Position numbers and translations under genes: made by a program. Of a stretch of 38,270 bases of DNA, positions 4,147 to 36,975 are shown in pieces. Source of the stretch: Octopus sinensis (Eukaryota); contig NW_021835789.1 in the NCBI RefSeq assembly GCF_006345805.1, positions 1 through 38,270 of the forward strand, read 5' to 3'. The notes below the pieces were generated by a model, which saw only the letters and a program-made list of their open reading frames with translations, made no database searches and was not told the origin of the DNA. Position 1 is the first letter of the stretch. Each line of letters begins with the position of its first letter.

Positions 4147-4800
4147 ACAAGGTGATGCTGAAAAGTTCCCGACATCGGATAAAACAAAATGCAGGAGAAT
4201 CAGTTAATTATGATATTTTTCAATCTCCTCTCAGATTCACCCACTTATTGCAGCGGTTCTTCAAGTTTTTCTAAGCCCTGTAGAAAAACTCATAAAGTTG
4301 GGCCTCCAGCCAGGCCTTCCATGACACCCGTAAAACCAGAAACTTTCCACCCATTACTCGTATAGTGGGAGAGATAGATAGACTCATGGCTTTGGGTAAA
4401 AGAAAATAAAGGTGTATCAGTTAATTACAATTCTTTTAGCATATTCCCCTGTCACATTCACACACTTATTGCAGCGGTTCTTCTATTTTTCTAAGCCCTG
4501 TAGAAAAACTCGTAAATTTGGGCCTTCCATGAAACCCGTAAAACCAGAAACTTTCCGCCCATTACTCGTATAGTGGGAGAGATAGATAGACTCCTGGCTT
4601 TGGATAAAAGAAAATATATGAAGATCAGTTAATTACAATTCTTTTAGCATATTCCCCTGTCACATTCACATACTTATTGCAGCTGTTCTTCAGTTTTTCT
4701 AAGCCCTGTAAAAGAACTCGGAAGGTTCGCCCCCCCCCCCACCTCAATCAGGCCTTTCGTGACACCCTTAAAACAGGGAACTTTTCATCAACCCTACGTA
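4147..4800. mobile_element. Three tandem units of a mariner-type MITE
   Basis: CAGTTAATTA at 4201, 4418 and 4626 (periods 217 and 208 bp). Left end GATGCTGAAAAGTTCC and right end GGAACTTTTCATCAACCCTACGTA are TIR-like. Confidence 0.7.
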
Positions 4801-13358: not shown

Positions 13359-13625
13359 GTTAGTTAGTTAGTTAATTTGGCTCAAAAGCAAATAGCAAGG
13401 CCATGTAGGGGGACATGGAGTTAAGTACAGGGTGGTGTTCATGTAAAGAGTTCAGGCCACTTGAGGTCCAGGGGCTTTGAACAAGCGGTCGTCGGCATCT
13501 TCACCATCTCGTCTGGCAGCTTGTTTCCACGGATCCGCACCCGGACGGAGAAAGCTCCTCTCCTAATCCCTCGATTGATGAAATCGTCGCAGGTAGAGCT
13601 TTTCGGAATGACCCCAGCCGACCGC
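13359..13625 (-). mobile_element. CR1-clade LINE 3' end
   Basis: Reverse complement of 29150-29430, with a (CTAA)n tail. Confidence 0.9.
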
Positions 13626-19504: not shown

Positions 19505-20047
19505 TTTCTACTATAGGCACAAGGCCTGAAATTTATGTACAGAGGACTAGTAGATTACATCGATCCCAGTGTTACACCGGTACTCAATTTGTCGACCCCA
19601 GCAGAATTTGAACTCAGAGGGTTAAGACGGACGAAACGCTAAGCATTTCGTCCAGCGTGCTAACGATTCAGCCAGCTCGCCGCCTTCGCCTTAATCATAA
19701 TAATAATAATAATTATTATTATTATTATTATTATCATTCTGGGTTAAGGCGGCGAGCTGGCCGAATCGTTAGCAGGCCGGGCGAAATGCGTGGCCGTATT
19801 TCGTCTGCCGTTACGTTCTGAGTTCAAATTCCGCCGAGGTCGACTTTGCCTCTCATCCTTTCGAGGTCGATAAATTAAGTACCAGTTCCGCACTGGGGGT
19901 CAATGTAATCGACTTTATACCTATGTCTGTCCTTGTTTGTCCCCTCTGTGTTTAGCCCCTTGTGGGTAGTAAAGAAATAAGTATTTCCTCTGCCGCTATG
20001 TTCTGAGTTCAAATTCTGCCGAGGTCGATTGCGCCTTGCATCCTTTC
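19505..20047. mobile_element. Two divergently oriented SINE B copies (19505-19690 minus, 19746-20047 plus) separated by a short (AAT)/(ATT) tract
   Basis: GGCGGCGAGCTGG heads on both strands. Confidence 0.9.
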
Positions 20048-26533: not shown

Positions 26534-26954
26534 CATATATATATATATATGTATCTATATATTATACATATATGTATGTATGTATGTGTGTGTGTGTGTG
26601 TATGTATATGTATATGTATATACATATACATATAACTTAACTTATATACTGTTAAGTAGCCACATGTATAGTTATTTGAATTGAAATTTCCATATATAAA
26701 GAATACTGACAGATTACGTTTGTCTACCAATCTGCTGGTAATGAAATAGCTTGATAGTTGACACTATCAAACATTACAAATATTACTTGACGACATAACA
26801 ATTTAGAAAGCTCGAGAGAACGTGAAATAATTTGTTTTCTTTTAACGCTTTGACTCGAAGTAGGAATGCTACAAATAACAGCTTGTAAAAATATTGGACA
26901 GAGAAATTTGAAGGCTACCCAGTATTTACGTGTTACTCTTTATAGGCTTTTCTA

Positions 26955-27740
26955 AGGCGGCGAGCTGGCAGAATCGTTAACACGCATGGCAAAATGCTTA
27001 GTAGTATTACGTCTGTCTTTACGTTCTGAGTTCAAATTTCGCCCAGTTCGACTTTGCCTTTCATCCTTCCGGGGTCGATAAATTAAGTACCAGTTACGTA
27101 CTGGGATCGATGTAATCGACTTAATCCCTTTGTCTGTCCTTGCTTGTCCCCTCTATGTTTAATCCCTTGTGGGTAATAAAGAAATAAGAATCGTTAGCAC
27201 ACCGGGCAAAATGCTTTGCGGTATTGCGTCTACCGCTACGTTCTGAGTTCAAATTCCGCCGAGGTCGACTTTGCCTTTCATCCTTTCGGGGTCGATTAAT
27301 TAAGTACCAGTTATGCACTGGGGCCGATAAAATCGACTTAATCCATTTGTCTGTCCTTGTTTGTACCTCTCTGTGTTTAGCCCCTTGTAGGTAGTAAAGA
27401 AATAGGTATTTCGTGCACCTGGACGTTCTGAGTTCAAATTTCGCTGAGGTCGACTTTGCCTTTTATCCTGTCTAGATCGATAAATTAAATACCCGTGAAA
27501 CACTGGGGTCGATGTAATCGACAAATCCTCTCCCCACAAAATTTCAAACCTTTAGTAGAAAGGATTATTTATGACTTTTCTTGGGCGGTAAGCTGGCAGA
27601 ATCGTTAACACGCCGGGCAAAATGCTTAGCAGAATTTTGTCCGTCTTTACGTTCTGACTTTTAAATTCTGCCAAAGTTAACTTTACCTTTCAACCTTTCG
27701 GAATCAATAGATATAATCGACTTACCTCTAAAATTTAAAA
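26955..27740 (+). mobile_element. Tandem cluster of SINE B units
   Basis: Four GAGTTCAAATT/GACTTTTAAATT cores. Units restart immediately after the AAAGAAATA tail. Confidence 0.9.
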
Positions 27741-28316
27741 CCATTATTTATAGTTTTTCTAATCCGAGTTCAACCGTTAAATAAAATTAACATTGCTATT
27801 TTCCTCTGCAAGTTCACCAGATCAGATTACCAGTAATACTTAATGGCTTCCTGTTTTCAAGGTTGGTCAACGAAGATTATCCTGACGATAACTTGCTGTA
27901 AATTTAGCGAGTTAAATCATTCTGTTTTTCTATACCTCATACTGTGATGCTTCTGGACACACCACTGGTGATGTTTCTTGGGGTTGGTTAGTCAAACCCT
28001 AACTTGTGTGCAGTTAGCTCCAGCCCAGGTAGCTCTGCATTTTCCAGGATTCGCACCTTTTGATCCACAGTCATCTTGGGGCAACGTTCTCTGCCTCTAC
28101 AAGCAAGCTTGATGGCCTTCAGCCGACTGGGACCTGTACACAAAGCATATTGTGATCTCTGCTGCAGGAATGCAAACCCCTGTTTTCTTACGTCGATGGA
28201 ATCTCACCTTGCTTGCTACCCATTGCTTTGGCTTAACTCCAGCAGATCCGTTTATTTCCTTCTCTTACTCTCATTTACCTCCTTCATTAAGTCCTCCAAG
28301 GGAATGGAGAAGTACC

Positions 28317-28550
28317 TATTTCTTTACTACCCACAAGGGGCTAAACACAGAGGAGACAAACAAGGACAAACAAATGGATTAAGTCGATTACATCGACCCC
28401 AGGGCGTAACTGGTACTTAATTTATCGACCCCCGAAAGGATGAAAGGCAAAGTCAACCTCGGTGGAATTTGAACTCACAACGTAACGACAGACGAAATGC
28501 TGCTACGCATTTCGGCCGGGCTTGCTAACGACTCTGCCAGCTCGCCGCCT
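28317..28550 (-). mobile_element. Full-length SINE group B, the 3' part of the tRNA-SINE chimera
   Basis: Head GGCGGCGAGCTGGCAGAGTCG through tail GTAGTAAAGAAATA. Confidence 0.92.
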
Positions 28551-28563
28551 TAAAGTAACGAGC

Positions 28564-28635
28564 CTCCCCGGCGGGGAATCGAACTCCGGTCTCCCGCGTG
28601 ACGGGCGGGGATACTTACCACTATACTACCGAGGA
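28564..28635 (-). tRNA. tRNA-Asp-GTC: tRNA-Asp(GTC) copy, probably a retroposed pseudogene
   Basis: 72 nt TCCTCGGTAGTATAGTGG...GTTCGATTCCCCGCCGGGGAG. Cloverleaf with anticodon GTC at 28602-28600. U33 is C, and there is one T-stem A-C mismatch. Confidence 0.92.
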
Positions 28636-28844
28636 TCAGAATGGAGAAGTACCATCAGAGCTACCAGCTTGGAGATAACGAGTATAAATCTGTCGTCAGA
28701 TTTTCGTTCGATACAATCAAAAGTAGTTCATCGGAAGAGCCGTTGAAGCGTCACGTAGAAAGACTCGTGATATTTGTTTTGACTTAGTGTACTTGAAGTT
28801 TCAATGGGATTGAGCCCAACACTCTGATCACCACTGGTATCACT

Positions 28845-29431
28845 TTTACATTACCAGCAGCCATATTCCTACCGCTCTATGTAACGCTGGTGAGACCCAT
28901 ATTGGAGTACGGGATTCAAGCCTCTTCTCCCTATCTCCTCAAAGACATACTGCATCTCGAAAGAGTCCAGAAGCTGGCTACCCACATGGTTCATGGTCTC
29001 AAGAATTTGTCATATGAAGAAAGGCTGAAGACGCTCGACCTTTATTCTCTAGAAAAACGACGACGCCGTGGAGATCTCATTCTTGCTCACAACATCATAA
29101 GCGGAAAGTGTAACCTCTCGAAAGTGCTGTTCTTCACTCCTGCTCCAGAGCGTCGGCTGCGGGGTCATTCCGAAAAGCTCTATCTGCGACGATTTCATCT
29201 CAATCGAAGAGAGGGTCTTTCTCCGTCCGGGTTGCGGATCCGTGGAATAAGCTGCCAGACGAGATGGTGAAGATGCCGACGACCGCTCGGTTCAAAGTCT
29301 CCCTTGACCTCAAGTGGCCTGAACTCTTTACATGAACATCACCCTGTACATAACTCCATGTCCCCCTACATGGCCTTGCTTTTTGCTTTTTGAGCCAAAA
29401 AGTTAACTAACTAACTTAACTAACTAACTAA
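28845..29431 (+). mobile_element. CR1-clade LINE 3' fragment (ORF2 C-terminus, 3' UTR and (CTAA)n tail)
   Basis: LVRPILEYGIQASSPYL.KDI..LERVQKLAT...LSYEERLKTLDLYSLEKRRRRGDLI is the classic CR1 post-RT region. A frameshift is present near 29220. Confidence 0.93.
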
Positions 29432-30984: not shown

Positions 30985-31400
30985 CCTTTTCTACTCTAGG
31001 CACAAGGCCCGAAACTTTTTGGGCGGGGGCCAGTCGATTAGATCGACCCCAGTACGCAACTGGTACCTAATTTATTAAGCCCCGAAATGATGAAAGGCAA
31101 AGTCGACCTCGGCGGAATTTGAACTCAGAACGGAAAGACAGACGAAATACATATTTCTTTACTACCCACAAGGGGCTAAACACAGAGAGGACAAACAAGG
31201 ACAGACAAACGGATTAAGTCGATTACATCGACCCCAGTGAGTAACTGGTACTTACTTAATCGACCCTGAAAGGATGAAAGGCACAGTCGACCTCGGCGGA
31301 ATTTTAACTCAGAAGGTAGCGGCAGTCGAAATACCTATTTCTTTACTACCCACAAGGGGCTAAACGCAGAGAGGACAAACAAGGACAGACAAACGGATTA
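30985..31400 (-). mobile_element. Tandem SINE B units
   Basis: Repeated AAAGAAATA.GTATTTCG junctions. Confidence 0.9.
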
Positions 31401-31996
31401 CTCCTCCAGTACTGTTCTGATTTTGTCTACAGAATTCATATTTTTCCCATCCAAATAATTTTGAAGACTGCGGAATAAATGATAATCAGACGGGCATTGT
31501 CCGGCCCATATGGTTGATGGGGCATCGTTTCCCATTCAAACAGATCCAACCTCTGGAATATCATCCTCGCTGTATATGGCCAAGCATTATCCTGATGGAA
31601 GAACCTTTCGTCTTGAAACCAAAGATGATTGTTTTTCTTCTAGGGCTTACTTGAATGGCTGGTTGAATGACCAAGTCCAAACTTCTCTGCTAGCTTCTCA
31701 ACAGTTACGATGGCATTTTGTTCCACCAGGGTTTGCAGGACATCCTCATCAAGTTCTACAGATCTTCCAGGACGAGGTTCGTCTTTTAGGATGTAGTTTC
31801 AGGCTCGGAATTTCTGGGACCACCGTTGACACTGGCCTACATTTATTGCCCGCTCTCCATACACTGCATTAATATTCCTCGCACTTTCCGTTGTGTTGTT
31901 GCCGTTATTGAACACATAAAACAAAATATACCGAATATGCTCCTTTGTCACTTCTATTATAGCATTGTATATGTAACTGTTAAAATCGAACTGCAC
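31401..31996 (-). mobile_element. Internally deleted mariner transposase
   Basis: EVTKEHIRYILFYVFNNGNNTTESARNINAVYGE...DEPRPGR (HTH region) is fused to FHQDNAW..HQPYGPDNA/SDYHLFRSLQNYL. The WVPHEL and first-Asp region is missing. Confidence 0.9.
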
Positions 31997-36400: not shown

Positions 36401-36745
36401 GGTTATGTAGCTTTGTGATGTATTTAGGGTATATTTCGAGATTGTCTTTCCTTTCTCTGAATATGGAACGTTAACCCCTTGACGCCGGTATTACTCGAAG
36501 CATTCGAAACACTGCTCCGGGTTTTTTTTTATCTAATGAGACCACACAAACACACAAGTGTCAACGAGCTCGCGTCTATTTACGTTCACCGTTACAATAA
36601 CATAGCATCGTACATTTACGTCTACCAGTTTATGAAAACGAACTATGTGAAGCTATTTATCATAATAGGATATGCACGAGTTATTCTGCTCAAGTTCAGA
36701 AAATAGCTTGCGTGTGGTACTACCCAAAACACGGTATTATGCATG

Positions 36746-36975
36746 CGGCGAGCTAGCAGAAGCGTTAGCACACCGGGCGAAATGCTTTGCGGTACTTCGT
36801 TTGCCGTTACGTTCTGAGTTCAAATTCCGCCGAGGTCGACTTTGCCTTTCATCCTTTCGGGGTCGATAAATTAAGTACCAGTTACGCACTGGGGGTCGAT
36901 GTAATCGACATAATACCTATGTCTGTCCTTGTTTGTCCCCTCTATGTTTAGCCCCTTGTGGGTAATAAAGAAATA
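36746..36975 (+). mobile_element. Full-length SINE group B with a 13-bp TSD
   Basis: GGTATTATGCATG at 36733-36745 and 36976-36988. Confidence 0.93.

What the first reader, a model, noticed from the sequence alone, without database searches (positions are those of the whole stretch)
28302..28653. Retroposed pre-tRNA-Asp plus SINE chimera with an exact 15-bp TSD, inserted in a Hero element
Seen: GAATGGAGAAGTACC occurs at 28302-28316 and 28639-28653. Between the copies, on the minus strand, lie a 3-nt leader (TGA), a 72-nt tRNA-Asp, a 13-nt trailer containing only TTT, and then a full SINE B. Removing the insert and one repeat restores the Hero-like peptide SKLVALMVL/SIPLEDLMKEVNESKR, which supports a true TSD. 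Inference: a Pol III transcript starting at a tRNA-Asp gene read through a weak terminator into a downstream SINE and was retrotransposed as one unit. There is no CCA, and a leader and trailer are present, so the template was unprocessed. An RT template switch is the alternative. This may be a nascent composite SINE.
Basis: partly seen in the sequence, partly recalled or inferred. Interest (0 to 1): 0.8.

Follow-up and report, generated by a model that had tools for sequence, protein, structure and literature searches.

The report
Pre-tRNA-Asp fused to SINE, retroposed once
In an octopus genome, one retrotransposition event pasted in a 322-base hybrid made of an unprocessed aspartate tRNA transcript joined to a full-length short repeat (SINE); this is a clean single example of a known way in which new SINEs are thought to arise, and there is no evidence yet that it has multiplied.

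Summary
An exact 15-bp direct repeat (28302-28316, 28639-28653) brackets a 322-bp insert. On the minus strand the insert reads TGA, a 72-nt tRNA-Asp(GTC) without CCA, a 10-12-nt trailer, then a full-length copy of the window's abundant SINE.

The insert ends exactly at the SINE's usual 3' end. The duplicated target starts with GGTAYT, as at most other copies of this SINE. So the unit went in by one SINE-type target-primed reverse transcription.

The tRNA is 71/72 identical to a gene-like tRNA-Asp found elsewhere. It carries C33 in place of the universal U33 and has no terminator, so it is a retro-pseudogene, not a gene. The genome is an Octopus.

- The "restored Hero peptide" joins two different reading frames.
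- No tool recognised the host repeat as Hero or as any LINE.

Template switching and read-through cannot be separated here. I slightly favour a switch from the SINE RNA's 5' end onto the U-tailed 3' end of a nascent pre-tRNA-Asp.

Copy number, the source gene and empty-site alleles could not be tested, because none of the DNA collections scanned returned any octopus sequence. Verdict: real, a new member of a known kind, moderate interest.

The parts
28302..28316 (.). Target-site duplication, copy next to the SINE 3' end. On the minus strand it reads GGTACTTCTCCATTC.
   Evidence: Exact 15-mer repeat. It abuts the canonical SINE end ...AAGAAATA. It starts with GGTAYT, as do the flanks of 5 of the 9 SINE 3' ends listed, the chimera's included; 7 of 9 fit the looser [G/A/T]GTAYT.
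28317..28553 (-). Full-length copy of the window's abundant tRNA-derived SINE ('SINE B'), TTAAGGCGGCGAGC...GTAGTAAAGAAATA, 237 nt.
   Evidence: Aligns over its whole length to the other copies at 87-90% identity. It is 6.4% from the consensus of the other copies, which are themselves 5-9% from it. The 5' end TTAAGGCGG is shared by 4 of the 6 SINE B heads listed.
28552..28554 (-). Junction T-run (TTT). One to three of these T's could belong either to the pre-tRNA trailer (oligo-U end) or to the SINE 5' end (TT).
   Evidence: Sequence and the comparison of SINE 5' ends. Assigning the T's to one partner is inference.
28554..28563 (-). tRNA 3' trailer GCTCGTTACT. There is no CCA.
   Evidence: Sequence directly after the discriminator base G. 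A gene-like tRNA-Asp in L002 likewise has a 9-nt trailer followed by TTTTT.
28564..28635 (-). tRNA-Asp(GTC) retro-pseudogene, 72 nt. A box at 28618-28628, B box at 28575-28585, anticodon at 28600-28602, C33 at 28603.
   Evidence: ARAGORN. Rfam gives 50 bits, against 54.8 and 60.4 bits for the gene-like tRNA-Asp copies in L002 and L003. It is 71/72 identical to the L002 gene; the only difference is U33->C.
28636..28638 (-). Three nucleotides (TGA) between the 5' TSD copy and tRNA position 1. They are either a short 5' leader or untemplated nucleotides added at the end of reverse transcription.
   Evidence: Sequence. The origin cannot be decided from 3 nt.
28639..28653 (.). Target-site duplication, copy next to the tRNA 5' side.
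   Evidence: Exact 15-mer repeat.

Best explanation
A single LINE-driven, target-primed reverse transcription event inserted a chimeric cDNA into a decayed interspersed repeat of an Octopus genome.

Proposed steps:
1. The partner LINE's machinery nicked a GGTAYTT-type target and primed on the 3' tail of a SINE B RNA (...GUAGUAAAGAAAUA).
2. It copied the SINE RNA to its very 5' end (UUAAGG...).
3. It then jumped, through 2-3 nt of A:U microhomology, onto the oligo-U 3' end of a nascent, La-type pre-tRNA-Asp (...GCUCGUUACUUU-OH) in the nucleus.
4. It copied that RNA to its 5' end.
5. Second-strand synthesis produced the 15-bp duplication.

The product is a dead tRNA-Asp pseudogene (U33C, no terminator) fused head-to-tail to a complete SINE.

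Shown: one unit, an exact TSD, the canonical SINE 3' end at the TSD, the shared target motif, a full-length SINE 5' end at the junction, a trailer without CCA, and a near-gene-identical tRNA.

Inferred: the template jump itself, the oligo-U end of the donor RNA, and the identity of the LINE partner.
For: - The exact 15-bp repeat brackets only tRNA plus SINE sequence.
- The insert ends at the same base (...AAGAAATA) as eight other SINE B 3' ends. The first bases of its TSD (GGTACTT) fit the [G/A/T]GTAYT motif seen at 7 of the 9 ends listed, the chimera's included. The independent copy at 36745-36975 has its own 13-bp TSD, GGTATTATGCATG.
- The SINE part starts at the family's 5' end, TTAAGGCGG. 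That is what is expected if the RT ran off the end of the SINE RNA.
- The tRNA has a trailer of 9 nt plus a T-run and no CCA. This mirrors a gene-like tRNA-Asp with a 9-nt trailer plus T5.
- The tRNA is 71/72 identical to that gene-like copy.
- Template switching to tRNA-Asp has been proposed for the origin of PittSINE (PMC5729268) and for SINE module exchange in molluscs (PMC4758252).
Against: - The TTT at the junction can be assigned wholly or partly to the SINE 5' end (TTAAGG). An oligo-U pre-tRNA end is therefore not proven.
- A source locus with a SINE lying 10 nt downstream of a tRNA-Asp gene would give exactly the same sequence by read-through.
- The SINE part has 4.3% private substitutions against 1/102 in the tRNA plus TSDs. 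That would hint at a pre-mutated genomic SINE copy, but it is not significant (Fisher p = 0.18).
- No octopus genome could be searched for the source gene.
Confidence: 0.5

Rival explanations
1. Read-through (5' transduction). Somewhere in the genome a full-length SINE B lies 10 nt downstream of a tRNA-Asp gene and displaces its terminator. Pol III started at the tRNA promoter and ran through the T3 stretch into the SINE. The SINE's 3' tail then recruited the LINE machinery, which retroposed the whole co-transcript.
For: - The trailer has no run of four or more T's, and the SINE has none internally, so read-through is physically plausible.
- If the SINE starts at TTAAGG, the trailer ends ...ACT, with no oligo-U of its own.
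- The SINE part carries 10 private substitutions in 230 nt, as a random genomic copy might.
Against: - It needs a special source locus that was not found. The search was not informative, however, because the DNA collections returned no octopus sequence.
- The 15 nt upstream of the SINE within the chimera do not begin with the GGTAYT target motif that most SINE B insertions show. The hypothetical source insertion would therefore be atypical.
- The excess of private substitutions is not significant (p = 0.18).
Confidence: 0.3
2. This locus is one copy of an already amplifying dimeric SINE family (tRNA-Asp unit plus SINE B unit). The family would be transcribed from the tRNA-Asp A and B boxes and mobilised through the SINE B tail. 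The fusion event, by either mechanism, would have happened earlier and elsewhere.
For: - The A and B boxes of the tRNA part are intact.
- There is no internal T4 terminator across the whole unit.
- Dimeric and trimeric tRNA SINEs are known (cited in PMC4758252).
Against: - None of the other SINE B heads listed, in 38 kb of window, 20 kb of O. vulgaris (L001) and L004, is preceded by a tRNA.
- A protein-space search with the junction ORF found only ordinary tRNA-Asp genes.
- The tRNA part is only 1 nt from a gene-like sequence, so there has been little time for a family history.
- All of these are weak tests.
Confidence: 0.12
3. Other origins:
- an RNA-level fusion before reverse transcription (for example RtcB-type ligation, as shown for U6/L1);
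- two separate insertions that happen to share one pair of repeats;
- an assembly artefact.
For: RNA ligation is documented for U6/LINE-1 chimeras (PMC6789731, listed; mentioned).
Against: - Pol III primary transcripts carry a 5' triphosphate and a 3' OH, not the ends RtcB needs (established knowledge).
- Two events would leave two TSDs.
- The perfect TSD and the canonical SINE end argue against misassembly.
Confidence: 0.05

Closest known systems
Bipartite chimeric retrocopies made by LINE reverse-transcriptase template switching (U6/L1 and related; Buzdin et al. 2003, as cited in PMC4758252 and PMC4824008)
   Same: Two unrelated transcripts are fused in the same orientation. The small Pol III RNA is the 5' part and the retroelement is the 3' part. 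One target-site duplication surrounds the pair.
   Different: - The 3' partner is a complete SINE rather than a 5'-truncated L1.
- There is no poly(A); the tail is ...AAGAAATA and the target is GGTAYTT-type, so the enzyme is not L1-like.
- The 5' partner is an unprocessed pre-tRNA with a trailer.
Origin of PittSINE in pittas: tRNA-Asp head acquired by template switching from TguSINE1 RNA (PMC5729268)
   Same: The same tRNA species (Asp) and the same proposed mechanism, and a product that could act as a new Pol III-driven SINE.
   Different: PittSINE replaced the old head and became a multi-copy family. Here the old SINE head is kept, giving a dimer-like structure, and only one copy is known.
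Dimeric and trimeric tRNA-derived SINEs (colugo CYN, tree-shrew Tu and others; cited in PMC4758252)
   Same: The architecture: a tRNA unit followed by a second tRNA-derived unit, with a LINE-recognised tail.
   Different: Those are amplified families with consensus sequences. Amplification of this unit is not shown.
tRNA/LINE-1 chimeric insertions in primates (bioRxiv 10.1101/2025.02.02.635956)
   Same: tRNA sequence co-inserted with a retroelement inside one 9-19-bp TSD.
   Different: Those are mostly tRNA halves in antisense orientation, attributed to twin priming. Here the tRNA is full-length, in sense orientation, and carries a trailer.
Octopus SINE families OK, OR1 and OR2 (Ohshima & Okada 1994, cited in PMC4824008 and PMC4758252)
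   Same: tRNA-derived SINEs of Octopus. SINE B is probably one of them or a relative.
   Different: This is a lead, not a test.

Membership tests
LINE-mediated chimeric retrocopy (single-event insertion) | One target-site duplication flanks the whole two-part unit. | tested here: met
   An exact 15-bp repeat lies at both ends, and everything between the copies is tRNA or SINE.
LINE-mediated chimeric retrocopy (single-event insertion) | The 3' part ends at the retroelement's normal 3' end, at a target typical for that element. | tested here: met
   It ends ...GTAGTAAAGAAATA like eight other SINE B 3' ends. Its TSD starts GGTACTT, and the [G/A/T]GTAYT motif is present at 7 of the 9 ends listed.
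LINE-mediated chimeric retrocopy (single-event insertion) | Both parts are in the same orientation and joined at RNA ends (5' end of the 3' partner, 3' end of the 5' partner). | tested here: inconclusive
   The orientation is the same and the SINE 5' end is full-length. The tRNA side ends in a trailer whose oligo-U overlaps the SINE's TT.
LINE-mediated chimeric retrocopy (single-event insertion) | No genomic source locus has the two parts already adjacent (this separates template switch from read-through). | not testable with these tools
   The metagenome and prokaryote-genome collections returned no octopus sequence: 0 hits even for the SINE core 23-mer.
Composite/dimeric SINE family | Internal Pol III promoter (A and B boxes) at the 5' end. 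| tested here: met
   The tRNA-Asp A box TAGTATAGTGG and B box AGTTCGATTCC are identical to those of the gene-like copy in L002.
Composite/dimeric SINE family | Multiple copies at different sites with different TSDs. | tested here: inconclusive
   No second copy was found in the ~59 kb of octopus DNA available or in protein-space searches. A genome-wide search was not possible.
Functional tRNA-Asp gene | Cloverleaf with the universally conserved U33, and a downstream Pol III terminator (T4 or longer). | tested here: not met
   C33 at 28603, while L002 and L003 have T. The Rfam score drops to 50 bits from 54.8 and 60.4. There is no T4 run on the minus strand from 28660 down to 27900.
Hero-clade LINE (host element) | Reverse-transcriptase and restriction-like endonuclease domains, or clear homology to Hero proteins. 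| tested here: not met
   No Pfam family at a meaningful E-value in the three minus-strand frames of 28654-29410 and 27700-28316, or in the two plus-strand ORFs tested. The protein searches returned only a 103-aa O. vulgaris hypothetical protein and one spurious repeat protein. A decayed C-terminal fragment could escape these tests.

The most novel reading that the evidence does not exclude
The unit is the founder or an early member of a new dimeric tRNA-Asp/SINE-B family in Octopus. That would be the first step of SINE head acquisition caught with the donor pre-tRNA's leader and trailer still attached. It would show that nascent, La-stage pre-tRNAs are the substrates for new SINE heads.
Probability: 0.12. 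Interest if true: 0.55.

Novelty: new member of a known kind. Interest (0 to 1): 0.35.

Why it matters
New SINE heads and dimeric SINEs are usually explained by reverse-transcriptase template switching onto a small RNA. That explanation is inferred long after the event, from consensus sequences.

This locus preserves the raw product:
- a tRNA still 71/72 identical to a gene-like copy, with its trailer and no CCA;
- joined to the exact 5' end of a complete SINE;
- inside a perfect 15-bp duplication.

If the source tRNA-Asp gene can be found in an Octopus assembly, this one locus would discriminate template switching from read-through. It would also show which tRNA processing intermediate is captured. 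As a single pseudogene it has no evident effect on the host.

Tried and rejected
- **Empty-site peptide test.** A 99-codon plus-strand ORF is restored by the empty site. It has no Pfam match, and ORFs of that length are common in this window (38 of at least 100 aa).
- **Identifying the host repeat.**
  - Pfam on the minus-strand frames and two plus-strand ORFs gave nothing.
  - A k-mer protein search with a stitched peptide gave only P0001, an O. vulgaris protein.
  - An exhaustive phmmer of an 80-aa segment gave P0001 plus a spurious repeat protein.
  - The P0001 locus (L001) covers only window 29001-29412, not the insertion site. No paralogous empty site was obtained.
- **Looking for further chimera copies or the source gene.**
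  - A junction-ORF protein search found only ordinary tRNA-Asp genes.
  - Three DNA scans (tRNA end plus trailer, the SINE core, and a gapped tRNA-SINE pattern) all returned 0 hits.
  - A search with the SINE antisense ORF gave one 543-bp metagenome contig.
  - An exact look-up of 10 window ORFs found none in the collection.
- **Literature sequence search.** Strings from the SINE were found in no paper.
- **MFE folding of the tRNA.** Uninformative, z = 0.02.
- **Substitution load.** Comparing the SINE part with the tRNA and TSDs to separate the models was not significant.

Full report
**What is there.** The 15-mer GAATGGAGAAGTACC occurs exactly twice in the window, at 28302-28316 and 28639-28653. 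Shuffles allowing two mismatches give a mean of 0.11 matches. Between the copies lie 322 bases (28317-28638), which read on the minus strand as:
- TGA;
- a 72-nt tRNA-Asp(GTC) at 28635->28564. ARAGORN calls it as the only tRNA in the window, and Rfam scores it at 50 bits;
- GCTCGTTACTTT;
- a SINE from AAGGCGGCGAGC... to ...GTAGTAAAGAAATA.

There is no CCA after the discriminator base.

**The SINE.** The last ~237 nt of the insert align over their full length with at least five other copies in the window (19744-19979, 36745-36975, 26953-27186, 27187-27404, 31152-31332). They also align with a copy in an Octopus vulgaris locus (L001) and with one on a small metagenome contig (L004), all at 87-90% identity.
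- The chimera's SINE is 6.4% from the consensus of the other copies, within their own range of 5-9%.
- All nine 3' ends found stop at the same base, ...AAGAAATA.
- Seven of the nine, the chimera's included, are followed by [G/A/T]GTAYT.
- The independent copy at 36745-36975 has its own 13-bp TSD, GGTATTATGCATG.
- The chimera's TSD, read in SINE orientation, is GGTACTTCTCCATTC. It shows the same target or microhomology signature.
- Four of the six SINE B heads listed begin TTAAGGCGG, and one further copy begins CTAAGGCGG. The chimera therefore contains the complete 5' end of the SINE. The tRNA trailer proper is GCTCGTTACT (10 nt), and the T-run straddles the junction.

**The tRNA.** A protein-space search with the plus-strand ORF that crosses the junction returned two ORFs. 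Both lie over ordinary tRNA-Asp genes inside tRNA clusters.
- The gene in L002 (a Logan contig of unknown organism) is identical to the window's tRNA, including A52. The one exception is T33, where the window has C33 at 28603.
- U33 is essentially universal in elongator tRNAs (established knowledge).
- Rfam scores fall from 60.4 bits (L003) and 54.8 bits (L002) to 50 bits in the window.
- The L002 gene has a 9-nt trailer followed by TTTTT. The window copy has a 9-nt trailer (GCTCGTTAC) followed by TTT and then the SINE.
- On the minus strand there is no run of four or more T's from 28660 down to 27900.

The tRNA part is therefore a very slightly decayed copy of an unprocessed or 3'-unprocessed transcript. 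It is not a gene.

**One insertion event.** Four facts together leave little room for anything except one target-primed reverse transcription event primed on a SINE B 3' tail that carried a tRNA-Asp sequence at its 5' end:
- the duplication is exact;
- the interval contains nothing but tRNA and SINE;
- the interval ends at the canonical SINE 3' end;
- the target shows the family's motif.

I put about 0.85 on that core statement.

**How the fusion arose.** Two models predict the observed sequence.

*(a) Template switch.* The RT reaches the 5' end of the SINE RNA (UUAAGG...). The cDNA's terminal AA pairs with the oligo-U 3' end of a terminated pre-tRNA-Asp (...GUUACUUU-OH), and synthesis continues to the pre-tRNA's 5' end.
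- This explains why the junction lies exactly at the SINE's 5' end and in a T-run.
- It also explains why the trailer has the same layout (9 nt, then a T-run) as the one gene-like copy available for comparison.
- The mechanism has been proposed for a tRNA-Asp head in birds (PMC5729268) and for SINE module exchange in molluscs (PMC4758252).

*(b) Read-through, or 5' transduction.* A source locus has a SINE B 10 nt downstream of a tRNA-Asp gene, and Pol III runs through. This is possible because neither the trailer nor the SINE contains T4.

Points bearing on the choice:
- Against (b): the 15 nt upstream of the SINE in the chimera lack the GGTAYT motif expected of a typical SINE B insertion.
- For (b): the SINE part carries 10 private substitutions in 230 nt, against 1 in 102 for the tRNA plus TSDs. 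This is not significant (p = 0.18).
- The three bases TGA at the 5' end may be a short leader or untemplated additions, and cannot decide the matter.

My estimates are 0.5 for (a), 0.3 for (b), 0.12 that the locus belongs to an already amplified dimeric family, and 0.05 for everything else.

**The host repeat and the organism.** A stitched translation of the minus-strand flank hit one protein, a 103-aa 'hypothetical predicted protein' of Octopus vulgaris, at 90% identity.
- Its locus on chromosome OX597817.1 (L001) matches window 29001-29412 at 95.6% and contains a SINE B copy. The window is therefore from an Octopus, either this species or a close relative.
- The same repeat has a third partial copy at window 13362-13622.
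- Neither paralogue reaches the insertion site.
- Pfam finds nothing in the three minus-strand frames of the flanks or in the two plus-strand ORFs tested.
- An exhaustive phmmer search of 1.84 billion representatives adds only a spurious low-complexity protein.

The 'Hero' label is therefore unsupported, though not excluded for a decayed 3' fragment. It is not evidence.

**What could not be done.** It could not be run.
- The metagenome collection returned nothing even for a 23-mer of the SINE core, and the prokaryote-genome collection returned nothing for the gapped tRNA-SINE pattern. No octopus sequence was found in either.
- Exact look-ups of ten window ORFs found none in the protein collection.
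- A SINE-ORF search returned a single 543-bp contig.

The absence of further copies is therefore uninformative beyond the ~59 kb of octopus DNA I could read. In that sequence no other SINE B head is preceded by a tRNA.

**Comparison and verdict.** The structure belongs to the known class of chimeric retrocopies and SINE-head acquisitions. It differs from mammalian tRNA/L1 chimeras, which are mostly antisense tRNA halves (bioRxiv 10.1101/2025.02.02.635956). Here the tRNA is full-length, in sense orientation, still carries a trailer, and is fused to a complete SINE. It is a neat textbook-quality example and a good test case once an Octopus assembly is queried. It is a new member of a known kind, not a new kind. 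Interest 0.35.

Noticed in passing
window 19980, 27405, 36976 (+); 31335, 31151, 28316 (-); L001 4637 (-): SINE B copies all end ...AAGAAATA, and 7 of 9 are followed by [G/A/T]GTAYT. Both copies with a readable TSD (36745-36975 and the chimera) have TSDs that start GGTAYT. This suggests a sequence-specific target, or 3'-end microhomology priming by the partner LINE.
   Followed up: partly
window 26970-27404 (period 217) and 31032-31400 (period 184): Head-to-tail arrays of full and 5'-truncated SINE B copies, joined at AAGAAATA|GGTATTTCG. The second sequence is an internal SINE site. The arrays arose either by repeated insertion into that internal GGTATTT site or by tandem duplication.
   Followed up: partly
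window ~31440-31940, minus strand: A decayed mariner/Mos1-type transposase remnant. The translation matches Pfam HTH_48 at E = 5e-15 and contains in-frame stops.
   Followed up: yes
window 29001-29412; window 13362-13622; L001 9948-10360: The repeat that hosts the insertion has at least three partial copies (88.6-95.6% identity). In O. vulgaris one of them is annotated as a 103-aa 'hypothetical predicted protein' (P0001), probably a gene call on a transposon fragment.
   Followed up: partly
window 19591-19686 (-) and 19744-19979 (+): Two SINE B heads face away from each other across an (ATT)n microsatellite. The minus-strand one has a duplicated 5' end, TTAAGGCG-AAGGCGGCGAGC.
   Followed up: no
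window 27584-27701 (+): A related SINE with nearly the same tRNA-like head (GGCGGTAAGCTGGCAGAATCGTTAAC). Its similarity to SINE B stops at about position 122 and is lower (79.8%). It may be a sister family that shares the head module.
   Followed up: no
L002 1422-1495 (-): A gene-like tRNA-Asp in a tRNA cluster (with Ile-AAT and Arg-ACG) carries an A52:C62 mismatch in the T stem, the same as the window's copy. The source organism (run SRR20718599) is unknown. It shares no repeats with the window.
   Followed up: partly
It has no Pfam match and is probably chance.
   Followed up: partly
window 4313-4720: A 208-bp unit present as two tandem copies at 92% identity. Not examined.
   Followed up: no
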